Origin: Octopus sinensis
Lineage: Eukaryota
Reading direction: 5' to 3'
Assembly: GCF_006345805.1 (NCBI RefSeq)
Contig: NC_043011.1
Span: 8,990,001 to 9,054,000 of the forward strand
Length of the DNA: 64,000 nt
Positions 1 through 45,922 of this stretch are shown piece by piece. Positions within the stretch are counted from its first letter, which is position 1. Every line of letters begins with the position of its first letter. A model generated the notes under the pieces. The model made no database searches and was not told the DNA's origin. It was given only the letters and a program-made list of their open reading frames with translations. The position numbers were made by a program, and so were the translations under genes.

Positions 1-205
1 GCACACACACACACACACACACACACATGCAAACAGTCGTGATTTTACAGATGTATGTGTGTGGAATAAGATTTGTGAAATTCTTCAACCCTTGTACATA
101 TTGCTGTCATCGATGATGGGGATGATGATAATGATGATGATATTAACGTACAGATATAGTTGTGTTCAAGTGTGCTTATATCTATGTATACATATAGATG
201 TATAA

Positions 206-291
<86 letters not shown>

Positions 292-848
292 TGTGTCTTG
301 CAAATCAATTGCGCTTCAGCAAATATGTTCCCAGCTTCTCCGTGTTCTCCATTCCTTGGCAATCATTTGGAATTCATGTCTTATCTTTAGTGTTTCTTAT
401 TAAAGAATGAAGACGGAAATTTATGTTTTACAATTGAATTATCTGCTTCAGTGTCATTGATGCCATTTCTGGACGGTACCAATGAGGTATGTGAAATGGA
501 CTGACTTCAAATGGGGATCGAAACCAGACTGCTCCAATTGGAACGATATGTAATTCATATTGATCCAGTGGAAATAGATTAAAACAATTCCATATATATG
601 ATCCGGAATATATAATTTGAACAATTGGGTTGACTCTCTTTTACCACTGTTTTTTTCCGTTTCAAGTCTCTCTGCACATGATTCAGTCAGTAGTTACTCC
701 CAGGTACTCCTAGGTTTCTCCGAGCAATCGGCTTATCAAGCTGCTACCTGATCATTTGCGATGGAATTTTACACACCAGCAATGCACTCAATTTGGTGAG
801 TGGGAACATAGATATGATTGGTTAGGAACACTGAAGTTCCTTTCAGTG

Positions 849-880
<32 letters not shown>

Positions 881-1624
881 TGTATATATGTATATATAGG
901 ATTGCGGTTTCGTTTCCCAGACCGGGCGAGGTGAGGGTTTATTGAGCGAAAACACCTAAAGCTCCACGAGGCTCCAGCAGGGGGTGGTGGCGGTCCCTAC
1001 TGTACTCTTTCGCCACAACTTTCTCTCACTCTTTCTTCTGTTGGCCTGCTCGACTAGCCAGCAGGGTGGCGTCATTTGAAGGCTAAAACAATGCGAAGCA
1101 CATTGTGACCAGCGATGTGTAGCAACATCTGATAGCCTGGTCGGTCACGGTGATCACGGTGAGGGAAGCAGCCCCTTTCTTTTCGGTAAAACGATAAAAT
1201 ATGCCCAGTCCACATTTCAAAGAGGGAAAGATGCTTCGAGTCCCGCCCACTCAGTGCAAGCATTGGGGAAAAAGTAAAGAAGCCTTAAAGAAGAGGATAA
1301 TGTTGTTGTTGTTTTTTGTTGATGATGATGATGATGGTGGTGATGATGATGATGATGATGATGGTGATGGTGATGATGATATGAACAAAAATAACGTCAA
1401 GAAATTTTGGACAAACACATTTTCTTACAATAACATTGAATAGGGAGCAGGAAGGAAGGAAATTAACATTAAGTTATACGAAAAGGGAGTTAAGTAGAAA
1501 GGCCGCCATTCTGTGGATCTGGGTTTGGACTGTCTTGTGGAGTAATGACTACATAACAGGCACACTAAACTATTTAATCATAGCTACGCTGAAGACCATA
1601 TTAATTGCTGTCATGATAATGATA

Positions 1625-1689
<65 letters not shown>

Positions 1690-2099
1690 TAATAATAATA
1701 ATAATAATTTAAGAAAGGCCGAGCGTTGGATATTTGAAATGATCTTTGATGAGAATTATAAGGTGATACCTGGAACTTTTGACTGGTATAGTTACCTTAG
1801 TGTTGTAAACATAGGTATATTTTGAATCAGTCGCTTTTATGATTTAGCTGTCCTTGCATGGAATTTTTGTCTGTTTTTTTTTTTAAACAAATACTACCCT
1901 GAGAAGACTCAGATGCAAAAAGGTGAATTTTTTATAAATTCTCCAGTGGCCATGAGACGAAACAAATTGTTGGATTTATACTTGTTTTAATTATTTGTTT
2001 TATTATAGTATATTAAATATTTTTAAAGTATAGTTGTATTATATTATAATATATATCAATTTTTAATATGTCAATTGTATTTCTTCTCCATTTCCTTTA

Positions 2100-2460
<361 letters not shown>

Positions 2461-3053
2461 TATGTACTTATGTGTGTATGTATACATACATGTATATTAC
2501 TGCAAGCTACGCTGCATAAGATCTAGATCCGAAAGTAGTTTTTAATTAACTGAAATTGTAACTATAATTAATGAGAAGGAAAATTCATTTGCATTAATGA
2601 AAATTAATGTAAGTAGGGACAAGGGAGATAGCTTCCAAAATTTTACCTGACCAAAAATTACAGGTATGCAAGGTGTGTGTGTGTGCGTGTGTGTATCTGA
2701 TATAATAGGACCAATGAGTCTGCATAGAAAAATTATTAATGTCCCCTTTGCATTTCCTAACGAGTCCACCATACTTTAACGTCCAAATATCTAATTAAGC
2801 CATGGTGATGGTGATGAGGATGGGGGTGTAATTGCTTTGTTTCTACGTTAATGAATTTGTTCTTCTGTCGTAAATATTTCGGTGATGCACAGGGATATAA
2901 AAAAAACTATAGAAATAATAATAATAATAATAATAATAAAGAAAGGAGAAGAAGACAAAAGAAGAGGGAGAAAGCTAATGTGTTATTGTGTTCAGAACAT
3001 TCCACTGAACTAAAACGTAAACAATAATGATAATAATAATAATGATAATTATA

Positions 3054-3094
<41 letters not shown>

Positions 3095-3237
3095 AATAAA
3101 TAAATAAATAAATAAATAGATATATATATATAATGAAGTGTTAGTTTTAGCTATATATATTATATATATGTACATTCATATATATAAACATATAGATATA
3201 TATATGCATATATTATATCTGTGTATATATATATATG

Positions 3238-3338
<101 letters not shown>

Positions 3339-3594
3339 TATATATTATATGTAATATATATATATACATATATATATGCATGTACATATATATATGTATA
3401 TATGTTCTTGTTCCATGCGCCATATTTCTTGGTCGTCTGAAGAAATATATATGCATGTATATGAATATGTACATACATATACATATATATACAGATATAT
3501 ACTCATATACATACATATATGTATGTATATATATATATATACATACACACACATATATATATATGTATATATATATATGCATATACATATATAT

Positions 3595-3629
<35 letters not shown>

Positions 3630-3983
3630 TATATATATATATGAACATATACGACCAAAGGCCGATCCGTTAGTTACGCAGTAGAGAGGTCAAGATATCG
3701 CTTTTTAAGAAGAAACTACCGTAAAGTATTAAGTATTATCGTAGTAATATTGTAATAGATATACATAGAGCCATATATATGTATATAACAACGAGCCATG
3801 CCGAGAAAATAAGAACAAGTAGAGAAAAGAAAGCGTGTTTTCGAGGCATCACCACATTCATAGGAAAGCCTCTCTCATAACACGGAAGAAGCTTTTCATG
3901 TCTCCATATAAAGACAATCTTCTTTTTCTTCCTGCATTTTTTTTTTTTTTGCCTTTCTTATTTATTTTTAATCTATAGCAGAC

Positions 3984-4088
3984 CTCTTTGAACTCCTGAA
4001 TTTGATTTTGGTTAAACATGGCAAATATATTCGATGTTGCTCTTTGTGTACGGGGTCTACTGGGATTGGTCTTTTTGCGAGAGGCGGC
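3984..4088 (-). CDS. Myosin regulatory light chain, alternative exon B (smooth/non-muscle-type, phosphorylatable N-terminus): AASRKKTNPSRPRTQRATSNIFAMFNQNQIQEFKE
   Basis: Minus strand reads tttatgtttcAG|GCCGCC...TTCAAAGAG|GTctgc. The exon is 105 nt, phase 0/0. The peptide contains the QRATSN(V/I)FAMF..Q.IQEFKE hallmark of MYL9/MYL12/sqh-type RLCs, including the MLCK Thr-Ser site. Confidence 0.93.
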
Positions 4089-4194
4089 CTGAAACATAAA
4101 AACGAGGGAAGAGGATTTCAAAGGGTGGGAAGACTATGGAACATTTAACACAAAGTGATTTGTTTATTTCCCCTTTATTTGGTCTGTGTCCTAC

Positions 4195-4245
4195 CTCTTT
4201 CAGCTCCTGCATCTGTCTCTGGGACAACTTCACTCTTTTTGGAGC
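4195..4245 (-). CDS. Myosin regulatory light chain, alternative exon A (molluscan striated-type N-terminus): APKRVKLSQRQMQELKE
   Basis: Minus strand reads tttttAG|GCTCCAAAAAGAGTGAAGTTGTCCCAGAGACAGATGCAGGAGCTGAAAGAG|GTag. The exon is 51 nt, phase 0/0. With the upstream MAEE exon it gives MAEEAPKRVKLSQRQMQELKE, nearly identical to the squid mantle RLC N-terminus as I recall it (AEEAPRRVKLSQRQMQELKEAF). Missing from the ORF track because it is short. Confidence 0.92.
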
Positions 4246-6526: not shown

Positions 6527-6546
6527 CTCTTCAGCCATTGTTGATT
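6527..6546 (-). CDS. Myosin RLC start-codon micro-exon (20 nt: 8 nt UTR + ATG GCT GAA GAG = MAEE; CDS 6527-6538)
   Basis: Minus strand reads cttaat...ctctgttttctttattatatattccAG|aatcaacaATGGCTGAAGAG|GTAAGT, with a consensus donor and a good acceptor. It joins in frame (phase 0) to either downstream exon. Confidence 0.88.
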
Positions 6547-8158: not shown

Positions 8159-9675
8159 GAAGATAATTGTAGTGGTGATGGTTAGGAGTAATGGTGGCGG
8201 TGCTGTTGTTTGGTGGTGGTGGTGGTGGTGGTTAGATATCGGTGCACCTTTTACGGAGAAAGTGAACAACTGGCGAAGTTTATGGCAAGTACCGCTGGCA
8301 TGGTGCCACAGTAATTCTAGAAGACAGAGAACGTGTGTTACTGCTGCCCCTGCTGCTACCGTAAGTCTTGGAGAATTTCTCTCTCTCTCTCAACATATGC
8401 CAAGCATATTACCACTCACCTCCCCTCCATTTCCTTCACTTATTCTCCTGAATAAGTATCAACCCCTACCTACCCTTCTCCGTCTCTCACTTATTCCACC
8501 AAATTCTGGCTGCTGCTATTTCAAGAACAAGTCAAAAGTTTGGGGAATTCTGGGGGTTTTGGTTTTTGTTGTTTTTGCTGAAGAACAGGGTGGTGCATAT
8601 CTATCTATCAACACCCACACCCATACACACACACACACACACACACACCCATACATACACACACTGTTTTATTTAAAACCTTGTTTGTTTCTGCTAAATA
8701 CAAGCCATTATTGTTACCAAACTTCAAAACTTCAAAACTGGCATCGAACGCCGTCGGTTCCAGCTGGTTGGTTGAGGCCATTTGAAGCACTGTCATTAAA
8801 GAACACTGGACCTAGGCACAAGACATCATGAGTCTCTTGGTCTGCTAGAAATAACAGCCTGATGTCCCTGATATCACATAATCTTTAAAAAGGAAGAACT
8901 ACTCAATAATCTCGTTATAAATACAGAGTCTGGCCTGCAGATGGGGTGGTCACTGTTGGAACGCCTTTGTTATTAAATCTCGTGGATCAGGATTGATAAA
9001 TAACTACAAGACCCCTGATCATTTGTCAGGTAACTGTGTTCCCATTTACGTCAGAGGTCCCCTTCCTTACTCTGTATGGCACCGACTTCCATAGCTGGTT
9101 GTTCCAAATCTAAATCGTACCCGGGAAACATTTGATCTTTATTATCATGACACTCCGGGCAAAAGAGGAATCCAAGACCTTCATTATCTCTAAACCAATA
9201 CCTGCTTAAAGACTTGAGCACGCTGGGTACTTTCCCGAAGGGCCGCACGGCTATAGGGCCCATTGCTAAACTGTACATTCTGTGGTTATATACATAGGGG
9301 TCCCAGAGCAGTGCTTTGCCCTCTTCACACAGGTCTGTCCTCCAGCCTAGGTGAGCAGGGGATTCGAAACCTTCATTACGTTGACACTGGTTAATATAAG
9401 AAGGTGGATTATGGCCTGCGTTGTGCTGCATCTGGCCTGGAAATAGCCTCTGCTTCGCTCTAAGTAAGTGTGTCGGAAGTGTGAGTGTGGGGCGGGGGTT
9501 GATTACTTTCATCCAACTGGAAGTGTCAGGTTACGTGTGTGTGTGGGTGTGAGTGGGGTGTAGGTAGAGATAGACATACACACAACTGATTTCATCAGAG
9601 AAAAGCTTCAAGAGAGAGGGTGGCCAAGACGGGTAGAAGAAAGCTGGTGAAAGAAAAAGGTGTAAAAACAGAAAG

Positions 9676-29460: not shown

Positions 29461-30446
29461 ATAATGACTGCATATATACAATATACCTCTTAGATCTACG
29501 AAAAGCATATATTACCACGATATCGAAGACCAGTAGGTCAAACGCAACTAGAAAAACTAATATAAAATACCCACAGTAGGATCACAAAAGCCTTTTTAAC
29601 TGAAATTCCGAAACATAATGAGGAAGAATAAAATAACGCCAGAAAAGGAACTAGAGAATGATGAAGCGACTATATTTAGGGATCTGTTGCTCCGCACAGA
29701 CAAGAATGTCAAGTTTCATCGATGGGATATTTTTGGGAAAGGACCAGCAGGAAAGAAAATAACTCTAAACTGAAGCCTAGGTCCTAACAGACGATAATTT
29801 GTCCCCAAAAGAATTGGAAAAAAATATTCAGCTATAGAGTTCTCGAAATAAAGACAAACAGAACGTAGGAATTGGTATTGGCTTTAGGGACCAGTTATGA
29901 GTGTACTGTTTAAGCTGAAGGGACAAGGCTGACTCATTTAAGAATATTGTTTTAAAAGGGAGAGACAATAACGCTTCTGGTCAAGACATAATCCATGTTT
30001 ACGACCCTTTGAAAAAGAAGAGGAAGGATCAGAGAAGACAGGAGCAATCTAAGGATCGGTCAGAACAAACGAAGAGGGGAATATTAGCCCATAGAAGAAG
30101 TCTGAGGACTGGTCTCTTGGCAATACCAAAAGTTGTTTCGTCTATTTTTGCATTAATCCCTTGCAGAGATGCCTTGCAACCGGTTCCAATGTTTGGCTCA
30201 TTCATATTCTTTATAAAAATCTGCCTGTCTGTCTGTCTGTGAGTCACTCCTGCTTTTATCGTAATTGGTGCCAAAGATATTCTGGGAGGAAACACAAATA
30301 CCACCCCCCTCGTTACTTTCCACTGATATGATATCTTTTACAAGTTTTCTGGCATTCTGGGTAATGGTAGTGTAGTATCAGATGGTGGTGTACTATAGTA
30401 GTAGTAATAGTAGTAGTAGTAGTAGCAGTAGTAGTAGTAGTAGTAT

Positions 30447-30481
<35 letters not shown>

Positions 30482-30789
30482 TAGTAGTAGTAGTAGTAGT
30501 AGCGGTTGTAGTGGTAGTGGTGGTGGTGGTGGTGGTGGTGGTGGTGAGGGTTGTGCAGTTGTGGTGTTGGAGGTGTAGTGGCAGTGGTAAACACTGGTAG
30601 TGTTGATGTCAGTAGTGAGAGGCAGAGACGGTGGCATTAGTGCCAGTATTGGTAGTGGCGGCGGCAGCGGTGTTGGTGGTGATCTGATGCTGTTGTTGTT
30701 GCTGTTGTTGTTGTGGTTGTTAACATTACACAAGTGTTTCATCAGTGAAAGAGAGCATAATGGCTGCGTTGTAGGGAGGCAACGTGCTG

Positions 30790-30846
30790 TTGTAGTGATG
30801 ATGGTGATGATGATGATGGTGATGATGATGATGGTGATGATGATGG

Positions 30847-30877
<31 letters not shown>

Positions 30878-31183
30878 TGGTGATGGTGATGACGATGATG
30901 ATGATGATGATGATGATGATGGTGATGGTGATGGAGATGATGGTGATGATGATGATGATGGTGATGATGATGGTGATGATGATGATGATGATGGTGATGG
31001 TGATGGAGATGATGATGATGATGGTGATGATGTGTGATGGTGATGGTGATGGAGATGATGATGATGGTGATGAGATGTGGTGATGATGATGGTGATGGTG
31101 ATGGTGATGATGATGATGATGATGGTGATGGTGATGGAGATGATGATGATGATGGTGATGATGATGATGGTGATGGTGATGAA

Positions 31184-31214
<31 letters not shown>

Positions 31215-31942
31215 GTGATGGTGATGGTGATGATGATGATGGTGATGATGATGGTGATGATGATGATGGTGATGATGATGATGATGATGGTGATGATGAT
31301 GGTGATGGTGATGATGATGATGGTGATGGTGATGATGATGGTGATGGTGATGATGATGATGATGATGGTGATGGTGATGGAGATGATGATGATGATGGTG
31401 ATGATGATGATGGTGATGGTGATGGAGATGATGATGATGATGGTGATGATGATGATGGTGATGATGATGGTGATGGTGATGGTGATGGTGATGATGGTGA
31501 TGATGATGGTGATGGTGATGGAGATGATGATGATGGTGATGATGATGGTGATGGTGGATGGTGATGGTGATGAGGGTGATGATGATGGTGATGGTGATGG
31601 AGATGATGATGATGAGGTGATTGATGATGGGTGATGATGATGGTGATGGTGATGGTGATGGTGATGATGGTGATGATGATGGTGATGGTGATGGAGATGA
31701 TGATGATGGTGATGATGATGGTGATGGTGATGGTGATGGTGATGATGGTGATGATGATGGTGATGGTGATGGAGATGATGATGATGATGGTGATGATGAT
31801 GATGGTGATGATGATGGTGATGGTGATGGTGATGGTGATGATGGTGATGATGATGGTGATGGTGATGGAGATGATGATGATGGTGATGATGATGGTGATG
31901 GTGATGGTGATGGTGATGATGGTGATGATGATGGTGATGGTG

Positions 31943-31974
<32 letters not shown>

Positions 31975-32455
31975 GGTGATGGTGATGGAGATGATGATGA
32001 TGATGGTGATGATGATGATGGTGATGATGATGGTGATGATGATGGTGATGGTGATGGTGATGGTGATGATGATGATGATGATGGTGATGGTGATGGAGAT
32101 GATGATGATGATGGTGATGATGATGATGGTGATGGTGATGGAGATGATGATGATGATGGTGATGATGATGATGGTGATGATGATGGTGATGGTGATGGTG
32201 ATGGTGATGATGATGATGGTGATGATGATGGTGATGATGATGATGGTGATGATGATGATGATGATGGTGATGATGATGGTGATGATGATGATGGTGATGA
32301 TGATGATGATGATGGTGATGATGATGGTGATGATGATGGTGATGATGATGGTGATGATGATGACGATGATGATGATGATGATGATGATGATGGTGATGGT
32401 GATGGAGATGATGGTGATGATGATGGTGATGATGATGGTGATGATGATGATGGTG

Positions 32456-32487
<32 letters not shown>

Positions 32488-32653
32488 GATGATGATGGTG
32501 ATGATGATGGTGATGATGATGATGGTGATGATGATGATGATGATGATGGTGATGGTGATGGTGATGGAGATGGAGAGATGATGATGATGACGATGATGAT
32601 GATGATGGTGATGGAGATGATGGTGATGATGATGATGATGATGGTGGTGATGG

Positions 32654-32684
<31 letters not shown>

Positions 32685-32700
32685 GATGATGATGATGGTA
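30790..32700. repeat. About 1.9-kb compound trinucleotide satellite (GAT/GGT with periodic GGAGAT)
   Basis: Read directly. It is the source of the poly-His, poly-D/G and poly-M/V artefact ORFs. Confidence 0.95.
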
Positions 32701-33234
32701 CTAGTGGCAGTGGTGGTGGTGGTGGTGGTGGTATGACAACCACGAGATAACTATCAACACGCACTCAATATAATGCACACGTCTGTATTGCATAATACGT
32801 GAGTGTGAGTTTTATGTATCTCGCGTTACGTAAATGTTATGCGATAAAAAACAAAACAAAAAACTGCTTCTTTCTTTATTTCTTACTCTCTCCTTTTCTA
32901 TCCCTCCCTCAATTTATGTGTATTTGTGTGTGTGTGTGTATATATATATATTTATGTGTGTGCGTTTGTATCTGTGTTTGTCACCCTACCATCGTTTGAC
33001 AACCGATGTTGGTGTGTTTACGTCCCCGTAACTTGGCGATTCAGCAAAAACAGACCGATAGAATAAGTACTAGGCTTACAAAGAATAAGTCCTGGGATCA
33101 ATTTGTTTCACTAAAGGCAATGCTCCAGCATGGCCGCAGTGAAATGACTGAAACAAATAAAAGAATATATATATATGCTTGTTTATGAGAACGCGAGTAT
33201 GTGTATAGACAAACATACATACATGTATGCAGAC

Positions 33235-33250
33235 AGACAGACAGACAGAC

Positions 33251-33312
<62 letters not shown>

Positions 33313-33369
33313 GTAGGTAGATAGATAGGTAGATAGATAGGTAGATAGATAGATAGATAGGTAGGTAGG

Positions 33370-33416
<47 letters not shown>

Positions 33417-33461
33417 GTAGATAGATAGGTAGATAGATAGATAGATAGATAGGTAGGTAGG

Positions 33462-33501
<40 letters not shown>

Positions 33502-33502
33502 C

Positions 33503-33533
<31 letters not shown>

Positions 33534-33534
33534 C

Positions 33535-33565
<31 letters not shown>

Positions 33566-33597
33566 GAATAGATAGATAGATAGATAGATAGATAGAC

Positions 33598-33676
<79 letters not shown>

Positions 33677-33712
33677 CAGATAGATAGATAGATAGATAGA
33701 TAGAGATAGATG
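33235..33712. repeat. (GATA)n/(GGTA)n/(GACA)n microsatellite
   Basis: Read directly. Confidence 0.95.
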
Positions 33713-34251
33713 TAAATATGTGCGTGTCTATCTATCAACCCATTTATTCAGTTATCTGTATAGATTGAAATAAATTTATATACACACCCATACACTCACG
33801 TATATATACTGTATGTATACATATGTATATAGATATATCCAGAAGTATATGTGTGTGTATGCGTATGTGTGCGTGTGTGTGTGTGCGTGTGTGTGTCTGC
33901 CCTACCCACTTTGCCATCCGAGTTATCTCTACCAACCCTCCATCCCCGTTCCCTTGCCAACATCTTCTTCGCCATATACAGTCATCCTCTCACATCTCAC
34001 ATCTACCTTTATGCAAACACCACCACCATCACCACCGACACCTCCCTTTCATCTAGATCTTCTTCTTCTCCTTCTTCTTCTTCTTCTTCTTCTTCTTCTT
34101 CTTCTTCTTCTTCTTCTTCTTCTTCTTCTTCTTCTTCTTCTTCTTCTTCCTTCTTCTTCTTCTTCTTCCTTCCCTTCTTCTTCTTCATCATCCCACATCA
34201 CACACACCACCACCACCACCACCACCACCACCACCACCACCACCATCACCA

Positions 34252-34285
<34 letters not shown>

Positions 34286-34839
34286 TTCTTCTTCTTTTTC
34301 TCCTCCTCCTCTCCTCTTCCTTCGTCTTCGTCGTCGTCGTCGTCGTGTTCGTATGTACCAATATATATATATATAAATAGAACGTTTATACATACATACA
34401 TATATGTATGCGAGTGTATATCTGCTATACACTCACATGTTCCTCCACGTAATATACACACACCTACATTATACCATGCAGTGTGTGTGTGTGTGTGTGT
34501 GTGTGTTCCTTTTTAATTTCTGTAACTTATGATATTTATTCGCGCATCTTTTCGCGTTGTCTTGGCAATATATTTCCAGTTCTTTCGTTCCATTTACCAT
34601 CTTTACAAATTTTCTGATGGTACCATTCTTACCATTCTTAACGGCATCACTGGCACCAAACAAACAAACACTCAACCGACCTTATCTCTGTTTCTTTATC
34701 TGTTTCCCTACCCCACCCCTATCGCTCACACACACACACACACACACACCTATACACACATAAATTTGGGTATGTCATTATACATACATATTAACGTAAA
34801 TGTATGCTTCTGTGCGTATGTGTCAACGTGTTTATATAC

Positions 34840-34989
34840 ATACATACATGCAGACATACATACATACAATACATACATACATACATACATACACACATAA
34901 ATACATACATACATACATACATACATACATACATACATACATACATACATACATACATACATACATACATACACACATACATACATACA

Positions 34990-35023
<34 letters not shown>

Positions 35024-35118
35024 CATACATACATACATACATACATACATACATACATACATACACACATACATACATACATGCAGACATACATACATAC
35101 ACACATACATACATACAC

Positions 35119-35151
<33 letters not shown>

Positions 35152-35165
35152 CATACATACATACA

Positions 35166-35199
<34 letters not shown>

Positions 35200-35240
35200 C
35201 ATACATACATATATACATACGCACATACATACATACATAC
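34840..35240. repeat. (TACA)n microsatellite; similar tracts at about 6230-6425, 26095-26222 and 47470-47728
   Basis: Read directly. Confidence 0.95.
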
Positions 35241-35332
35241 ACATTTACATGCGTATTTCTTTTCATCTAATTTTTCTCCCCTTTCTTTCTCTTTTCCTGT
35301 GCATATATGTGTGTGTACATACATGCGCGCGG

Positions 35333-35384
<52 letters not shown>

Positions 35385-35676
35385 TGTATCCTGCTCGAAC
35401 TCACGACCCAGGGATTGTGAGCCGAATACCCTAAACACTAAACCACGATACATTTTTTTTAATTATAAAAGTTGCAAAAACATCCCTAAAAACTGGTTCG
35501 TTCATCGGGGGGCAATTGCGATCAAGAATCACAACTGTCCCCCGATGAACGGGAACGGGAAACTGAGCGGTAGCTTTTTTTTTGTGATGTTTTTGCAGCT
35601 TTAATAACAAAAAAAAATCATTCTACTCTTCTTTTTTCCACCTTGTTTTGCATTCTTCTGCTTACTCGTGTATGTG

Positions 35677-36951: not shown

Positions 36952-38221
36952 CAGGTCATCCCATAAGTTCTGTACGATTTTACCTTTTTCAAAATTGAAT
37001 GAAATTTAATAGTATTTTAGAAAGTCTAATGGAATTAAAAATTATTTTTATGCATTTGCGTACATTTAAACTAATTAAATATTATTTTTCAGAATAATAG
37101 AGTTAAAATTTCTTTGATTAAAACCCTTTCTAACATGGAAGTATCCAAAGAGCATTTAAGACACATAATGCTTTATGAGTACAAAAAAGGAAACTCTGCA
37201 GCCGAAGCGACTCGAAACATACACTCAGTTTATGGGAAAGAATGCTTGAATGAAAGAACTTGCAGAAGATAGTTTGCAAAATTCAGAAGTGGAGATCTCA
37301 GCCTTAAAGATGAAGATTAAATAGGACGTCTAGTTGAGTTTGATGATAAGCTCCTTGAGGCATTGCTTGAAGAAAAATCCTGCATTATCAGTTGAAGAAT
37401 TGGCAATAAAGCTTAGTTCAAACCATACAACTGTTCATCGTCATCTTCAACAACTTAGAAAGTTTCCTAAAGTTGGAAAATAGGTGCCTCATGAATTGTC
37501 TGAAAGCAACCGCAAGTACCGAGTTGATATCTGCTCTTCTCTCCATTCTCGCGAACTCATTTCACCTTTTTTGGATAGACTTGACGAAAATGGATCTTCT
37601 ATCGAAATATTAAACGTCGTAAATAGTGGCTTGGTAAAAGGGAAAAAGCTCAACCACAACCGAGAAGGGAACTTCATGGGAAAAAGGTTCTTTTCTCTAT
37701 CTGGTGGGATTGCAGAGGAATAATTCACTTTGAATTGTTACCACCTAACGCAACAATCAATGCTCAAGTCTATTGTCAGCAATTAGAGTGTTTGAACCAA
37801 ACTTTGAAGAAGAAAAGACCCGCTTCGGTGAATCGAAAAGGAGTGATATTTCATCAGAGCAATGCGCGACCCCACACTGCAAAGTTCACATCACAGAAGA
37901 TCAAAAAGCTTGGTTGGGAAAAAATTCCTCATTCACCTTATTCTCCCGACCTTGCTCCTTCAGACTACCATTTGTTTTGTAGTTCACAGAATCATTCGGG
38001 GGACATAACTTTCGCAAGGCGGTCGAAACTGACATTTCAGAGTTCTTCGCTTTGAAACCAAAAGAGTTTTACATTGATGGGATTAAAAAGCTTGTAAATA
38101 TATGGAAGGAAGTCATAGATAATCAGGGAACGTACACTGATGATTAAATTTCAATTAAATATAACATTTGATCACTTGTTTCCGTTATTCAAATTTCGGA
38201 CAGAACTTATGAGATAACCTG
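36952..38221 (+). mobile_element. Full-length (1.27 kb) defective mariner (D,D34D) transposon in a (TA)n tract
   Basis: Imperfect TIRs: CAGGTCATCCCATAAGTTCTGTACGA at left and the reverse complement CAGGTTATCTCATAAGTTCTGTCCGA at right. The transposase starts at ATG 37135 (MEVSKEHLRHIMLYEYKKG...) and contains HQSNARPH and YSPDLAPSDYHLF, with stops and frameshifts. Confidence 0.93.
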
Positions 38222-40843: not shown

Positions 40844-42106
40844 GCCGTGGTTGATGATGCGCAGACACGCGCTGAGACTGCGACATCTCTGGCTCTATGT
40901 AGACGACGGTGAACAGGTGTGGTCGCCGTTTGTGAGGCCGCTTTCCCGCAGCTCGTCTCCATGACCGAACTGCAGTCGTGGATCAAAAAGAGGCCGAAGA
41001 AGGGCGAATGGCACCGCGAGTGTCGCGTTGCTCTCAAGCAACTCTGCCGTCCTGGGTCGACCTTGAGTGACTTCAACACAACCAAAGCATTCTATAGGGG
41101 ATTAGTGGAGGGGAGGTACGACGACGAGCTCGGGGCGAACCTGGACGTCGACGAGGAGTACCTGACCCGCCTGTTCAGGACGACTTTCGGGCCAGGGCCC
41201 ATGGACAACTTCCAGAGATCCCTGGCCTGGCAGTGCTACCGAGAAGCGCTACCCGTTCGGGATAAGCTCTACAGACACGGCTCGAGAAACACGGGGCCGA
41301 CCTGCCCGAGATGCGGTCAGAGCGACGAAACCGTTCTGCACGCACTCGTGCAGTGTCCAACAATTTCCGACCTGTGGGCTTGTGTCGAACAACTGCTGTC
41401 ACATGTGGGACGAGTCGGTTTATCAGCTGAGTCTATCGTTAATATTGTCACGCCTCCCTCCTTCAAACAGGAAGGAAGAGCTATTTTCATCATCCTTGTG
41501 GCTATGGCGAAAGAATAAAGAATGTATCTGGTGGACGCGTCTGAAAGGATTGGAGACAAACACTTTCCTCTCTGGTCAATCTCTCATCAACTTCTTCAAG
41601 TACCACTTGAAAAGGAAAGTGAGAGTAGAGAGGCAAGTTTTGTCTAGCGAATGTTTTAAAAAAAGATGGGTGAATGTAGCAAGAATGGCACGTATGAATG
41701 ACGAAGCCACCTTGAGCATGATCCTATGAACCCAGAAATTGAAAACAGAGAGTTGCTTATTTGCAAAAAAAAAAAAAAAAGAAATATAAAATGTGACTCC
41801 ATTGACCGAGGTTACCGTGGTCTTTTCCGTAGGCTTTTTCTTTCCACGGGTAAACCTCACCTGTCCCCCCCTTTACACTTCATATTGACATTTGTGTGAT
41901 AACGATCCCTATTGATCAATATTTTTTTTTTCTTCCTCTCCCCTTTTTTTTAACCCCCCTTTTTTTTGTCCTCTTTCTCTCCTTTTACGATCCCTTTTGA
42001 TCGAAACTCCCCCTTCCTTTTTTTTTTTTTTAAACCTTCAAAAGAAAAGCTCTACCTTGTAATTTGTTCTATCTGTGTGCAGCCCTGTGTGGCTAATAAA
42101 GAAACA
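40844..42106 (+). mobile_element. Tx1/L1-like LINE, 5'-truncated copy B
   Basis: ORF 40919-41518 contains FQRSLAWQCYREALPVRDKL and the CPRC...H...C zf-RVT motif. Same 3' end (AATAAAGAAACA) followed by (TATC)n. Confidence 0.9.
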
Positions 42107-42188: not shown

Positions 42189-45100
42189 ATGGACGGACGA
42201 TAGTCACATCGGCTCGCAGTAAGTTTGCCTTTTATTGCCTTCAAAAGTTTGTGTTTTGATAATATTTTTTATGTAAAAGTTGTGCAACCACTAATACTTT
42301 CAGTTGTACAAATTCTTTGCACGGGAAACCTGCCCTGTGTGGCGTGTTTCCCGATTTTATAAATTTGTTTTCGGCTTACTTAACCATTTCTGTTTTAAGC
42401 ATGGCGACTTCAAGCCATGAAGTCGTCGGTGAAAAGGTCACTGGTCTCCTTGACAACGCTTACGACGTTGATTTCCCTATACTGCCTTGACCACAATTGC
42501 ATGAAGGAGAGGAGAAGGGGAAAAGCAACACAGGCGCAAGTGTGAGCATGGACGCTAACACCGCCACCGCCACGCAAAAACTGGTAAACAACCCGACGAC
42601 AGCTTCACAGCCATCTACTACTACGAACGACTCTGCCACAAACATCACTACCAACACCACCACCACCACCTCCACAAAAAACAAGACAAATTTCGCGGAA
42701 GCAATACGACCAAAAAGGAGAATTTTAAAATTCACTACTCAACAAATACAAGACACGAAATCTTTACTCACCAAAGAAGGCGACACAATACACCTAAATA
42801 TTCTACGTAACATTTTGGAAGAAGCACAAAAGAAGATGATCATCTACAAAATACTCAACACCAAGACAAAGAAACCAGAAAGCCCAGCAACAGAAAAGAT
42901 TGAGAAGTACCTCGCTTCTGTTTGGCACTTTCGAAATTGTGTGAATTGGGGGTGTAAATTTGCTACCGTGCAAGTTCGCTTCCATACGGAAGAATTAGCA
43001 AAGAAGTTTTCGACGCTTACTTTGCGCACAGACCAGGTAACAATGGTACCTAGCTATCCTGGGCGCAGAGTAACGAAAATAACAATAAACAATGTGCCTC
43101 CAGAAGTGGATACCCAGTGGCTGGTATCGGCCATCTGCTTCGATATAGAAGAAGCAGATATTTTAGAAATCGCCGACATTCCAGAGGAAAGCTGGACTGG
43201 CAAAAAGCTTGAAATATTGCTTCAAATCACCCAGGAAGCAATAAATAATTTACCAACCAGTGTTCAACTAAAAAAAGACCAAAAATTGTATGTAGTGGTG
43301 GAGGGCAGAAGGCCAAGATGCTATTTGTGCAACAGTGAGGCACACCTCAGATATGGTTGCCCAACTGCTGCCAGAAATAGGTAACAGCAACAGCAACCAC
43401 TCCCAAAACCTGGAAGATAACCTCTGCTACCCACACCACCTTCAACGCAAAAGACAGGAAAAACAGCAGACGATGCAAAAACTGTTTCCCCCTCACCAAC
43501 TACATCACAAATTACCTTCGACATCGCAACCAACTAGAAAAACAACACTACCACCAACATCAAAATACAGACCAACACCAACGCCAGCACCAAGAACAAC
43601 AACCAAGAAAACAAATAACAATGACGAAAAGACAAATTCTGCCCCTAATACCCCAACAACACAAACACCACACAAAACAACAACACCTTCTACAAACATA
43701 CATATAGATGCAAACGCTTTGCCTTTACCCCCTTCTGATTTGTCAGATTTTTCGTCTGACGACGAAAGTTCGCCTGAATGGCAAATAGCCACAGGGGGTA
43801 AAAGGAAAAGACCTAAAAAAACCACGAAACAAGCAAATGCAGGTAAAGCAGGGAGATATATAACTCCTGATAGTCCCTTACACATACAAACCAACAACAA
43901 CACCGCAAAAACACACAAACAACTAACAACAATAGACACAGAAAATAGAAAACTAATGAACCACATCGCATCTAACACAAACATTTGTGAAGATGAACCA
44001 TCCACGCACAACACCACCACAACACATAAAAATAGTACACGTCACACAAACGCAGCACCACACACTCAAAACCCTCTTTCCAAATGCGGTCGGGGGGTTC
44101 CAGAAATATTTATCAAAAAAACTTTTTAAGAACCTCCTCAAAGACATCCCAAAAGAGGAGGAAACTACTCAAAATTTCGAAACAAGTAAGTAACCTTCCC
44201 TCTCGTCTCTTTCACTGTTGTGTGTGAAACACAAATTTTCGACCATCAATTATGCTTAAATTAAGTTGTGTGAATGCACGTGGCTTGGCGTCGACTTGGA
44301 AGCAAGGTTACCTTCTAAATGACATCAAGTCACTGAACGTTGATATAGTAGCTATCAGTGAATTCGATCATCCGAATGTGCCAACGTGGACTTGGACAAA
44401 CCGCGTCAGATCGTAGAGATCGTATCTAGATAGAGTTCTATGTAGGACAGAGGATAGAGATAGTGTAGGATATCCACAATTTAAAATTGTCAGCTACACA
44501 GATCACAAATTTGTGACGTGTACGCAGGGTCCCGGTTACTGGAAACTAAACACATCGTTCTCAGCACGGCAGGTTTACAGCCATCGTTAACAACCGCCGG
44601 TGGTCTGCTCTGAAAATGGCAATCAAATCGGAATCAATTAGGTTTAGCAAGGAATTAGCGATAGATCGAAATAGAGTAGAGGGAGACTTAGTTAAGAAAC
44701 TAGAAGAGGCACTTACAACTGGCAGCGAGGATGGCCCTCGACCAACACCTCAACGCCAAACACGAAGGTTGCGTCGTCAGAGCTAAAATGCGTGCCTTGA
44801 GGAACGAAGGGATCGAAGCTGCGCGAGAGGTCCGGGTAGCGGAGGCGCAACATGGCAACAGAGCCACCATTCGGTCTCTAATAGATCAACAGGGATGCAG
44901 TTTACTCGAACCCGAAAGGATGTGTGAGGTCTTTCAACAGCACTTTGCTCGACTGTTTGGTGCGAGTGGTGGGTTGGAACGCGGGATGGATTTCAGTGCC
45001 TACCTGACCGACCTGCCGCGGCTCTCGGCAAGAGAAGCGGAGTGTTGTGAAAGTCCCGCGATGGCGGGCTGCGCGAGGGATAAGTCGGCTGGATTGGATG

Positions 45101-45922
45101 GTTTACCCTACGAGCTGTATTGTCAAATGCCAGACTTGTTTGGCGACCTCTTGGCATCAGTCTACTGCAACTGGCAACAAAACGGGAAAATCCCCGGTTT
45201 TGTGAGCCGAGGTGCAATGACGTTGCTGAAGAAAGACCCAAACAAGGGGAATTTTATAGATAATTTCAGGCCCATCACTCTGCTCAACGCAGATTTAAAA
45301 ATTTTGGCCAAAGTAATAGCCGAGAGGTTGGCGCTTGTCATCGATAAACTGGTCGACAAGGCGCAAACATGCGCCGTGCCGGGCAGAACCATACATGACA
45401 ACCTCCATCTGATGCGCTACATCGTGGACAGGGTAGTTAAGGATCCTGGTATGGGTGGGGCGCTGATCAATTTGGATCAGTCTAAAGCTTTCGATAGGGT
45501 CGATCATCGGTACCTGGCGGCCGTCCTCAGGGCGGCTGGCTTCGGTCCCGTCTTCCGCGGTTGGATCGCTGCCTTGTATAGCGGCATCCGATCGGTAATT
45601 CGGGTGAACGGTCACCTGACGAAACCGTTTGATATCACGTGTTCGGTCCGTCAGGGATGTCCCCTGTCGGCGCTTCTGTGTGTATTGACTCTCGAACCGC
45701 TACTGCGGAAGCTGGCGACACTGAGAACTGGGTTGCGGGACGAGCGTGTCGGCATATGCGGACGATGTCACCGTCATAGTGTCGAGCGAAAAGCACATCA
45801 AGATGCTAGGCGAGACACTAAAAGAATACGAAACGGTGATGGGAGCGAAAATTAACCCGGAAAAGTCAGTGGGTTTGCTACTCGGCACCTGGAGAACCAA
45901 GCCCATGCCGTCCGACTGTGGA
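42188..45922 (+). mobile_element. Tx1/L1-like LINE, copy C: 5'UTR, ORF1 with CCHC knuckle, internally deleted APE, RT; 3' end missing
   Basis: ORF1 42497-43384 ends in CYLCNSEAHLRYGC. ORF2 starts at 44252 (MLKLSCVNARGL...DIVAISE). RT motifs: GLDGLPYELY, FRPITLLNADLKILAK, LDQSKAFDRVDH, SVRQGCPLS, AYADDVT. Confidence 0.92.

What the first reader, a model, noticed from the sequence alone, without database searches (positions are those of the whole stretch)
3984..4245. One myosin RLC gene with two mutually exclusive N-terminal exons: Ca2+-regulated striated type vs phosphorylatable smooth/non-muscle type
Seen in sequence: two phase-0 exons lie 106 bp apart, both end in the homologous E(L/F)KE, and both are in frame with the MAEE micro-exon. 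Exon A lacks the RATS phosphorylation site; exon B carries QRATSNIFAMF plus a basic N-terminal extension. Established: scallop RLC isoforms with and without the MLCK site arise by alternative splicing, and squid mantle RLC begins AEEAPRRVKLSQRQMQELKE. Inference: cephalopods switch between direct Ca2+ regulation and kinase regulation of myosin II by exon choice in one gene. The 51-nt exon is invisible to ORF finders.
Basis: partly seen in the sequence, partly recalled or inferred. Interest (0 to 1): 0.75.

Follow-up and report, generated by a model that had tools for sequence, protein, structure and literature searches.

The report
Octopus myosin light-chain alternative N-terminal exons
The octopus muscle myosin regulatory light chain gene really has two alternative N-terminal exons, one with and one without a kinase target site, but both products are already in public annotation and the arrangement is an old, shared feature of molluscs rather than a cephalopod invention.

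Summary
On the minus strand, a 20-nt ATG micro-exon (6527-6546, MAEE) is followed by exon A (4195-4245, APKRVKLSQRQMQELKE). Then come a 106-nt spacer and exon B (3984-4088, ...QRATSNIFAMFNQNQIQEFKE). All have AG/GT borders and are phase 0. The rest of the gene lies outside the window, 11.4 kb further on.

The window is Octopus sinensis. Both spliced products match RefSeq isoforms X2 and X1 of "myosin regulatory light chain LC-2, mantle muscle" letter for letter. They also match O. vulgaris models, and O. bimaculoides has corresponding X1/X2 models, so this is already annotated.

The same tandem exon pair, with a 66-73-nt spacer, occurs in abalone, a land snail, an oyster and a brachiopod. In the oyster the first exon carries RATSNVF. 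In octopus the second does.

The "switch between Ca2+ and kinase regulation" reading is only partly supported. The residues that make molluscan myosin Ca2+-sensitive lie in shared exons, so isoform B most likely adds phosphorylation on top of Ca2+ control. The genome also has a separate non-muscle light-chain gene carrying the same site.

Tissue use and actual phosphorylation were not testable here.

The parts
9071..9131 (-). 3' part of the upstream exon 1 (mostly 5' UTR). It contains an in-frame upstream ATG at 9131-9129 in weak context. The donor GT is at 9070-9069. The 5' end of the exon was not determined; a TATA-like tatataa lies near 9290.
   Evidence: tblastn of the N-terminal extension of the O. 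vulgaris 179-aa model CAI9736421.1 (P0005) hits 9131-9072 at 95% identity. The sequence reads ...ATACAGA|gtaagg. Splicing to the micro-exon gives IQ-K-ST-MAEE, as in P0005.
6527..6546 (-). 20-nt ATG micro-exon, aatcaacaATGGCTGAAGAG. It codes for MAEE and ends in phase 0. The acceptor is ttccag and the donor gtaagt.
   Evidence: The oyster gene has the same layout (ATGTCTGACGAC|gtaagt, MSDD).
4195..4245 (-). Alternative exon A (51 nt, phase 0-0), APKRVKLSQRQMQELKE. This is the mantle-muscle-type N-terminus with no RxxS-N-V-F site. The donor is gtagga.
   Evidence: It gives XP_029645814.1 exactly. It is 51/51 nt identical in O. bimaculoides. It matches the N-terminus of squid P08052 / PDB 3I5F_B.
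4089..4194 (-). 106-nt spacer intron between the two alternative exons. It has a long pyrimidine tract before exon B.
   Evidence: It is 102/105 aligned nt identical in O. bimaculoides, against 85-89% in large intron blocks elsewhere in the gene. The homologous spacers are 73, 67, 66 and 72 nt in Haliotis, Bradybaena, Saccostrea and Lingula.
3984..4088 (-). Alternative exon B (105 nt, phase 0-0), AASRKKTNPSRPRTQRATSNIFAMFNQNQIQEFKE. This is a smooth/non-muscle-like N-terminus. Thr22/Ser23 of the 174-aa isoform align with Thr18/Ser19 of MYL9. The donor gtctgc is weak.
   Evidence: It gives XP_029645813.1 exactly. It aligns to MYL9 chains 6xe9_C and 7mf3_D from residue 4. It is 104/105 nt identical in O. 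bimaculoides with one synonymous change. tblastn against the Haliotis and Bradybaena second exons gives E of 1e-9 to 1e-10.
1..3983 (-). First 3,983 nt of the 11,366-nt intron that leads to the common exon. That exon (AFTMIDQDRDG...) starts at G000:C15:8982617, outside the window. The stretch is mostly microsatellite and low-complexity sequence.
   Evidence: One search found no coding frames. Searches located the downstream exons at C15:8982617-8982542, about 8982079-8981974, about 8981461-8981383, about 8980494-8980446 and 8979586-8979486 (stop).

Best explanation
This is the 5' part of the Octopus sinensis muscle myosin II regulatory light chain gene (RefSeq name 'LC-2, mantle muscle').

After a 5' UTR exon and a 20-nt ATG micro-exon (MAEE), the pre-mRNA offers two adjacent phase-0 exons. 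Each encodes the segment just before helix A of the first EF-hand. Either one is joined to the common exon that starts AFTMIDQDRDG.

Exon A gives the 156-aa isoform, the protein known from squid mantle muscle. Exon B gives a 174-aa isoform. Its 18 extra residues recreate the smooth/non-muscle N-terminal extension: basic residues, Arg at P-3, Thr-Ser, then Asn-Ile-Phe.

Shown here:
- the exons, their borders and their phase;
- exact identity of both spliced products to annotated isoforms;
- conservation of the pair, of its short spacer and, where the two exon types can be told apart (Haliotis, Bradybaena, Saccostrea), of its order, in gastropods and an oyster; the brachiopod has the pair and the spacer, but both of its exons are of the QEFKE type.

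Inferred:
1. The residues that make molluscan myosin directly Ca2+-sensitive sit in shared exons. Isoform B is therefore still Ca2+-regulated and adds a phosphorylation-dependent layer. Phosphorylation of Ser23/Thr22 would loosen the folded off-state, as in smooth muscle myosin. This would apply in a subset of muscles or stages, comparable to the catch-muscle-specific phosphorylatable light chain of scallops.
2. Joining A to B is disfavoured because the spacer intron is very short and exon B's long pyrimidine tract pushes its branch point close to exon A's donor (steric hindrance). Exon B's weak donor makes it the regulated, minor choice.
3. The pair arose by an ancient exon duplication. The phosphorylation site was then lost from different copies in different lineages: the first exon in cephalopods and the second exon in bivalves.
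For: Anatomy and reading frames.

Identity to annotated proteins:
- exact matches: XP_029645813.1 and XP_029645814.1 (O. sinensis); CAI9736424.1 and CAI9736422.1 (O. vulgaris);
- corresponding O. bimaculoides X1/X2 models, which differ at two residues (MADD for MAEE, and PEQT for PEGT): XP_014777425.1 and XP_014777426.1.

G000 has 13,516 scaffolds and 2,719.15 Mb, which matches the O. sinensis assembly in Table 1 of PMC10700109.

Alternative forms in the O. vulgaris annotation come from PASA updates using Iso-Seq and RNA-seq (PMC10700109). The B model there therefore probably rests on transcripts.

Selection signal: exon B is 104/105 nt identical with one synonymous change, exon A is 51/51 and the spacer is 102/105 in O. 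bimaculoides. Large intron blocks elsewhere in the gene are 85-89% identical.

Deep conservation of the tandem pair, always AG|...|GT, always a multiple of 3 and always followed by AFTMIDQ:
- Haliotis: 84 nt, 73-nt spacer, 99 nt
- Bradybaena: 87, 67, 99, plus a third exon
- Saccostrea: 81, 66, 81
- Lingula: 165, 72, 114

The second-exon donor GTCTG is shared by octopus, Bradybaena and Saccostrea.

Over the last 13 residues, exon B matches second-position exons 10-11/13 and first-position exons 5/13.

The phosphosite aligns to MYL9 Thr18/Ser19.

The Ca2+-switch residues are in shared exons: ENMGDNF and IKG. Their roles are described in PMC4914028.

A separate non-muscle light-chain gene lies on C8.

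The scallop catch-specific phosphorylatable isoform is described in PMC12040844 and seen in PDB chains 3pn7_B versus 2os8_B.
Against: - No read-level RNA evidence was available here. Use of exon B rests on gene models and conservation.
- No B-type isoform from squid or cuttlefish was found in the protein collection. Outside Octopus the cephalopod distribution is unknown. The Argonauta entry is A-type only.
- Orthology of exon A with the first-position exon of other molluscs is weak on sequence alone (7-8/13 against 6/13). It rests mainly on exon order.
- The steric-hindrance idea is untested. The octopus spacer (106 nt) is longer than in the other taxa, and no clear branch-point consensus was found in it.
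- A both-skipped model exists (CAI9736423.1, 139 aa), so exon choice is not a strict either/or.
- The local RNA fold shows nothing special (z = +1.0).
- Phosphorylation, and its effect on a Ca2+-regulated myosin, is inference by analogy. The role of the scallop counterpart is itself described as unknown (PMC12040844).
Confidence: 0.6

Rival explanations
1. Exon choice toggles myosin II between two exclusive control modes. Isoform A would give direct Ca2+ regulation. Isoform B would give kinase regulation and stand in for a smooth/non-muscle light chain.
For: Exon B is 11/13 identical to the octopus non-muscle light chain over its last 13 residues. It aligns to MYL9 across the whole phosphorylation segment. 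Exon A lacks the site.
Against: Gly117 and Lys149 equivalents, needed for the Ca2+ switch, are in exons common to both isoforms. A scallop heavy chain and essential light chain with a smooth-muscle regulatory light chain is activated by either Ca2+ or phosphorylation (PMC4914028). A dedicated non-muscle light-chain gene exists on C8, and a further paralogue on C10656.
Confidence: 0.12
2. Isoform B is not a muscle-type specialisation. Instead it is a developmental or non-muscle form, for example embryonic, or pairing with cytoplasmic myosin II heavy chain. The phosphosite would then serve cell-shape control rather than contraction.
For: Regulatory light chains bind the second IQ motif promiscuously (PMC4914028). 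The Iso-Seq data behind the O. vulgaris isoform models come from several developmental stages (PMC10700109). The exact B sequence was seen only in annotation sources, not in assemblies of public sequencing runs, while A was.
Against: A canonical non-muscle light chain already exists. In bivalves the phosphorylatable splice form is a bulk component of adult catch muscle (PMC12040844; PDB 3pn7_B).
Confidence: 0.2
3. Exon B is a prediction artefact or a decaying duplicate that is not spliced into mature mRNA.
For: No read-level evidence was examined. Its donor gtctgc is weak.
Against: The peptide is 35/35 identical, with a single synonymous change, in O. bimaculoides. Homologous exons with intact borders occur in the same position in Haliotis, Bradybaena, Saccostrea and Lingula. 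Expressed proteins with this N-terminus type are found on short (about 1-2 kb), presumably transcript-derived, contigs; their source organisms are unnamed, but their N-termini are near-identical to named gastropod models. The O. vulgaris model comes from transcript-based PASA updates.
Confidence: 0.04
4. Both exons are normally included in tandem, giving one 191-aa protein, so the 'alternatives' are an annotation split.
For: Both exons are multiples of three, so tandem inclusion keeps the reading frame.
Against: The 191-aa sequence is absent from a collection of about 15 billion proteins, while both single-exon forms are present. The sequenced squid mantle protein and its crystal structures have the A-only N-terminus. 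Tandem inclusion would duplicate the segment leading into helix A.
Confidence: 0.02

Closest known systems
Scallop adductor regulatory light chains: the catch-muscle-specific phosphorylatable form (RLC-a; Placopecten catch chain, PDB 3pn7_B) versus the striated form (PDB 2os8_B, 1b7t_Y)
   Same: There are two isoforms identical after ...QEMKE that differ only in the N-terminal segment. One has [10 protein letters not shown] and one lacks it. The myosin is directly Ca2+-regulated, and the phosphorylatable form is tissue-restricted (PMC12040844). The oyster gene shows the same genomic layout as octopus: an ATG micro-exon, two tandem phase-0 exons 66 nt apart, then a common exon.
   Different: In the oyster the site sits in the first exon of the pair (...[20 protein letters not shown]). 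The scallop catch N-terminus is of the same type. In octopus the site sits in the second exon (QEFKE type). The octopus phospho-exon is therefore the positional counterpart of the bivalve non-phospho exon. Octopus exon A is much shorter (17 codons) than any bivalve or gastropod counterpart. I did not examine a scallop genomic locus.
Vertebrate smooth/non-muscle light chains (MYL9, MYL12A/B) and Drosophila spaghetti-squash
   Same: The N-terminal extension has basic residues, Arg at P-3, Thr-Ser and N-V/I-F, followed by AMF.Q.QIQEFKE. Exon B aligns to MYL9 from residue 4.
   Different: Those are separate genes whose myosins depend on phosphorylation alone. Here the segment is an optional exon of a muscle light chain that keeps the molluscan Ca2+-switch residues. 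Octopus has its own orthologue of this class on C8. In that gene the N-terminus and the AFNMIDQ segment lie in one exon.
Squid mantle muscle light chain LC-2 (Todarodes pacificus P08052; PDB 3I5F-3I5I chain B)
   Same: Isoform A is its octopus orthologue. phmmer gives E = 2e-77 over the shared part, and the N-terminus is the same AEEAP(K/R)RVKLSQRQMQELKE.
   Different: Only the A form is known as a protein. No B-type decapodiform sequence was found.
Mutually exclusive exon pairs enforced by a short intervening intron, such as alpha-tropomyosin exons 2/3 (recalled from general knowledge, not tested here)
   Same: The exons are adjacent, homologous and same-phase, with a very short spacer (66-106 nt) and a long pyrimidine tract before the second exon.
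   Different: The mechanism is not demonstrated. The exons differ two-fold in length in octopus. The reading frame would survive double inclusion or double skipping, and a skipped model exists.

Membership tests
Myosin II regulatory light chain (EF-hand protein of the calmodulin superfamily) | EF-hand pairs, with a canonical 12-residue metal-binding loop in the first EF-hand only | tested here: met
   Pfam EF-hand_7, EF-hand_6 and EF-hand_1 score above their cut-offs at residues 36-79 of isoform B. The loop DQDRDGFIGMED lies in the common exon.
Myosin II regulatory light chain (EF-hand protein of the calmodulin superfamily) | Full-length similarity to light chains solved in complex with myosin II heavy chain | tested here: met
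   3i5f_B squid E = 2e-77, MYL9 8e-60, scallop 1b7t_Y 1e-50.
Light chain of directly Ca2+-regulated molluscan myosin | Gly117 (scallop numbering) in ENMGDNF, which completes the Ca2+ site on the essential light chain | tested here: met
   ENMGDNF is present in exon 6, which both isoforms share. It aligns with scallop chains. Its role is described in PMC4914028.
Light chain of directly Ca2+-regulated molluscan myosin | C-terminal Lys149 equivalent (IKG), required for regulation | tested here: met
   MVDIIKGKSKEDEE lies in the last exon, shared by both isoforms. It aligns with scallop ...MIKGSG....
Light chain of directly Ca2+-regulated molluscan myosin | Ca2+-dependent activation of the ATPase of the holoenzyme | not testable with these tools
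   This needs reconstituted myosin.
Phosphorylatable smooth/non-muscle-type N-terminus (myosin light chain kinase site) | Basic residues at P-8 to P-6, Arg at P-3, Thr-Ser at P-1/P0 and a hydrophobic N-V/I-F after the serine | tested here: met
   Exon B reads R-P-R-T-Q-R-A-T-S-N-I-F and MYL9 reads [12 protein letters not shown]. Two of the three upstream basic positions are kept. Exon A has none of this.
Phosphorylatable smooth/non-muscle-type N-terminus (myosin light chain kinase site) | Actual phosphorylation of the serine in vivo or by a purified kinase | not testable with these tools
   No phosphoproteomic data were available.
Mutually exclusive exon pair | Adjacent exons, same phase, homologous sequence, each spliced to the same flanking exons | tested here: met
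   Both are phase 0-0. They share 6 of their last 13 residues. Both single-exon products are annotated. The lengths differ (51 versus 105 nt).
Mutually exclusive exon pair | Never, or only rarely, included together or skipped together | tested here: inconclusive
   The tandem 191-aa form is absent from the collection. A both-skipped 139-aa model exists in O. vulgaris. No read counts were available.

The most novel reading that the evidence does not exclude
The two-exon N-terminal module of the muscle regulatory light chain, with its 66-106-nt spacer, is an ancient spiralian feature. It is shared by brachiopods and at least three molluscan classes. Ancestrally both copies were phosphorylatable, as they still are in Lingula; in the gastropods one copy keeps the full R-A-T-S motif and the other has a substitution next to a conserved serine (Haliotis R-Q-A-S, Bradybaena R-A-P-S), so phosphorylatability of both is plausible but not shown. 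Cephalopods and bivalves then each turned the pair into an on/off choice for phosphorylation by destroying the site in opposite copies: the first exon in cephalopods and the second in bivalves. That would be convergent evolution of a splice-selected regulatory layer on top of direct Ca2+ control. I found no description of this exon-level history in the searchable literature.
Probability: 0.45. Interest if true: 0.45.

Novelty: already known. Interest (0 to 1): 0.27.

Why it matters
The finding itself is ordinary. Both isoforms are already public gene models, and the principle has been known from scallop muscle biochemistry for decades.

What remains useful is this. Octopus muscles that use isoform B should have a second control input, kinase signalling, on a myosin that is otherwise switched by Ca2+. 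This could bear on slow, tonic or visceral contraction in cephalopods. It is directly testable with existing tissue RNA-seq.

The comparative result may also be of use. The exon pair and its short spacer are conserved from brachiopod to octopus, and the site has been lost from opposite copies in bivalves and cephalopods. This gives a clean natural experiment for two questions: how alternative exons are kept apart, and what the still-unexplained phosphorylatable light chain of catch muscle does.

Tried and rejected
- **B-type isoform in squid or cuttlefish.** I ran a full-length search, listed members of the three squid-like clusters, ran an N-terminal-region search and ran a short-query search for partial ORFs. 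Only A-type sequences of 153-161 aa were found. Absence from this collection is not evidence of absence, and no decapodiform genome could be reached with the tools.
- **A third alternative exon in octopus**, as in heterobranch snails. tblastn and a pattern scan over the whole gene found none. A second copy of exon 4, as the Dreissena isoforms suggest, was also not found.
- **RNA structure.** I looked for structure that could pair selector and docking sites around the exon pair. The fold is no more stable than shuffled controls (z = +1.0).
- **Branch-point consensus in the spacers.** Plausible sites exist in Haliotis (47 nt from the donor) and, read by eye from the printed sequence, in Saccostrea (about 41 nt). 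Nothing is clear in octopus.
- **Genomic loci for other species.** Requests for Biomphalaria, Crassostrea virginica, Pomacea, Mya and one Lingula isoform returned nothing, because only the longest product of a gene is indexed. The O. sinensis protein itself is withheld from that index.
- **A script error.** A first script failed because I assumed one file per locus.
- **Exon B as the octopus non-muscle light chain.** I considered and rejected this once the C8 gene was found.

Full report
**Where the window comes from.** The window is G000:C15:8990001-9054000 of a 2,719,151,902-base assembly in 13,516 scaffolds. These are the figures given for the Octopus sinensis assembly of Li et al. 2020 in Table 1 of PMC10700109.

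**The observation.** On the minus strand the sequence reads ...ttccag|aatcaacaATGGCTGAAGAG|gtaagt at 6546-6527.
- Next is tttttag|GCTCCAAAA...CTGAAAGAG|gtagga at 4245-4195.
- Next, 106 nt later, is tgtttcag|GCCGCCTCT...TTCAAAGAG|gtctgc at 4088-3984.
- The translations are MAEE, APKRVKLSQRQMQELKE and AASRKKTNPSRPRTQRATSNIFAMFNQNQIQEFKE.

Two refinements apply. The MAEE exon is an internal 20-nt exon with its own acceptor. An upstream exon ends at 9071, and it carries an in-frame ATG at 9131 that one O. vulgaris model uses.

**The rest of the gene.** Nothing coding lies between 3983 and 1. A whole-genome search with a squid light-chain probe placed the remaining exons downstream on C15. Reading them gives five exons:
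- AFTMIDQDRDGFIGMEDLKDMFSSLG, starting at C15:8982617, 11,366 nt after exon B
- RVPSDEDLKGMLKECPGQLNFTSFLTLFGDKVSG
- TDPEGTLRNAFCMFDEDNQGFIPEDY
- LKDLLENMGDNFTKEE
- IKNVWKDAPLDNKKFDYNAMVDIIKGKSKEDEE, with the stop at C15:8979486

**It is already annotated.** MAEE + A + common exons (156 aa) and MAEE + B + common exons (174 aa) are both present, letter for letter, in the protein collection.
- The 156-aa form is XP_029645814.1 (isoform X2) in O. sinensis and CAI9736422.1 in O. vulgaris.
- The 174-aa form is XP_029645813.1 (isoform X1) in O. sinensis and CAI9736424.1 in O. vulgaris.
- O. bimaculoides has the corresponding X1 and X2 models, XP_014777425.1 and XP_014777426.1. They differ at two residues (MADD for MAEE, PEQT for PEGT).
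- The tandem A+B product (191 aa) is not in the collection.
- O. vulgaris also has a both-skipped 139-aa model, an N-terminally truncated one and a 179-aa one that starts in exon 1.

The O. vulgaris annotation added alternative forms through PASA updates based on Iso-Seq and RNA-seq (PMC10700109). Its B model therefore probably reflects a real transcript, but I could not see reads.

I found no paper in the searchable library that discusses light-chain isoforms in cephalopods.

**Is exon B under selection?** The O. bimaculoides locus (L023) aligns colinearly. Large intron blocks elsewhere in the gene are 85-89% identical. Exon A is 51/51, the spacer 102/105 and exon B 104/105, where the single change is a synonymous AAT to AAC. 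The two species are close, so this is modest evidence on its own.

**Deep conservation.** The homology search returned many molluscan, brachiopod, nemertean and bryozoan light chains labelled as isoforms X1 to X6. They differ only in the N-terminus. I fetched four genomic loci and located the exons:

| Species | First exon | Spacer | Second exon | Other |
|---|---|---|---|---|
| Haliotis asinina | [28 protein letters not shown] (84 nt) | 73 nt | [33 protein letters not shown] (99 nt) | |
| Bradybaena similaris | ...[23 protein letters not shown] (87 nt) | 67 nt | [33 protein letters not shown] (99 nt) | third exon KHARTTTNILSTFRQAQVTEYKE, 362 nt further |
| Saccostrea cucullata | [27 protein letters not shown] (81 nt) | 66 nt | AQQQKVRAATSNVLTKFNQRVIQEMKE (81 nt) | preceded by an MSDD micro-exon |
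| Lingula anatina | 165 nt | 72 nt | 114 nt | both exons carry the site |

Every exon has AG and GT borders and a length divisible by three. Every exon is followed by a common exon starting AFTMIDQ.

Octopus exon B matches second-position exons at 10-11 of its last 13 residues and first-position exons at 5 of 13. It shares the unusual donor GTCTG with the second exons of Bradybaena and Saccostrea. Exon A fits first-position exons only slightly better than second-position ones (7-8 against 6 of 13). Its assignment therefore rests mainly on order.

On this reading the exon pair predates the split of molluscs and brachiopods. The octopus first exon has lost the S-N-V-F segment that most other first-position exons keep. 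In the oyster it is the second exon that has lost the Arg at P-3.

The two Placopecten chains in the PDB are 3pn7_B ([25 protein letters not shown]...) and 2os8_B (ADKAASGVLTKLPQKQIQEMKE...). They are identical after QEMKE. It also shows that the scallop phospho-segment is of the first-exon type, not the counterpart of octopus exon B.

**What exon choice does.** Exon B aligns residue for residue with the N-terminal extension of MYL9. Thr22/Ser23 of the 174-aa isoform correspond to Thr18/Ser19, with Arg at P-3 and two of the three upstream basic positions kept. Exon A, the form sequenced from squid mantle (P08052), has none of this.

The molluscan Ca2+ switch depends on light-chain Gly117, which completes the Ca2+ site on the essential light chain, and on Lys149 (PMC4914028). 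Their octopus equivalents, ENMGDNF and IKG, lie in exons 6 and 7, which both isoforms share. The same review reports that scallop heavy chain plus essential light chain carrying a smooth-muscle regulatory light chain is activated by either Ca2+ or phosphorylation.

The best reading is therefore that isoform B adds a phosphorylation input to a myosin that stays Ca2+-sensitive, not that it replaces one mode by the other. The role of the analogous catch-muscle isoform in bivalves is itself described as unknown (PMC12040844).

**Exon B is not the octopus non-muscle light chain.** A probe of the spaghetti-squash type finds a separate gene on C8 (about 101506723-101559128, minus strand). Its first coding exon reads [62 protein letters not shown]. 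A further paralogue lies on C10656. The kinases that serve that protein would plausibly also accept exon B. This is inference.

**How the two exons are kept apart.** Both exons are multiples of three, so the reading frame does not police the choice. The spacer is short in every species (66-106 nt), and in octopus the last 45 nt are 78% pyrimidine. Candidate branch points sit 41-47 nt from the upstream donor in oyster and abalone (the oyster site read by eye from the sequence). This is the arrangement expected if the A donor and the B branch point are too close to be used together, but nothing here tests that.

Exon B's donor (gtctgc) is weaker than exon A's (gtagga) or the micro-exon's (gtaagt). 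This fits B being the regulated, minority choice. The local RNA fold is unremarkable.

**Verdict.**
- The gene-structure interpretation is correct but already in public annotation.
- The functional interpretation needs softening, from 'switch' to 'added layer'.
- The claim of a cephalopod speciality is wrong, because the module is ancient.
- The one possibly new point is the exon-level history of reciprocal loss of the site. It needs more genomes to confirm.

Noticed in passing
G000:C8299:20069-20620, C9300:526430-526981 and C12469:24880-25431 (loci L018-L020; sequence read in L018:1480-2100): Three identical copies of a divergent light-chain-like gene sit on unplaced scaffolds. The product begins MASKKTVKRPQKRQQRSTSNIFAMIEPDQIKRFKEVFGIIDQDSDG. 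Its two apparent in-frame stops lie in GT...AG introns of only 27 and 24 nt. Introns this short are not octopus-like. From general knowledge they are typical of dicyemid parasites of cephalopod kidneys, so these scaffolds may be contaminant sequence in the assembly.
   Followed up: partly
G000:C8:101506723-101559128 (minus strand; L021, L011) and G000:C10656:16207-17693 (L006): The C8 locus is a canonical non-muscle/smooth-type regulatory light chain gene. Its first coding exon holds both the [15 protein letters not shown] site and AFNMIDQ. A third, diverged paralogue lies on an unplaced scaffold. Its N-terminal exon was not found within the 1.5 kb examined.
   Followed up: partly
window 9071-9131, minus strand: Exon 1 of the light-chain gene contains an ATG (9131-9129) in frame with the main start, with no intervening stop. 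Its context is weak (C at -3, T at +4), whereas the main ATG has A at -3 and G at +4. One O. vulgaris model (CAI9736421.1, 179 aa) starts there. The window differs from that model by one residue (Q for R). The sequenced squid protein begins at AEEAP, so the main ATG is the one used there.
   Followed up: partly
proteins P0084 versus P0076 (Dreissena polymorpha isoforms X2 and X4): These isoforms differ in the N-terminus and also in the segment corresponding to octopus exon 4 (LSPQDKILQDMVKEAPGQLNFTMFLSLF versus TVPSDTVLDGMVKEAPGNQLNFTAFLSIF). This suggests a second alternative exon pair in that bivalve. Octopus has only one copy of this exon.
   Followed up: partly
window 44704-45855 (+), 40913-41518 (+), 37627-38055 (+): These are transposable-element remnants: reverse transcriptase (Pfam RVT_1, E = 2e-21), the zinc-binding region of a reverse transcriptase (zf-RVT, E = 2e-8) and a mariner-type transposase fragment (Transposase_1, E = 1e-24).
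   Followed up: yes
window 30446-32764 and many other stretches (for example 2027-3690 and 33076-35600): Very long triplet and microsatellite arrays read as runs of His, Ser, Ile or Asp/Gly in every frame. The light-chain introns are largely made of (TA/CA)n-type repeats.
   Followed up: no
protein P0089 (99 aa, labelled Campylobacter fetus subsp. venerealis, on a 338-bp contig): This database entry is 100% identical to the octopus light chain from MLKECPGQLNF onward but is filed under a bacterial name. It is almost certainly octopus contamination in that bacterial assembly.
   Followed up: no
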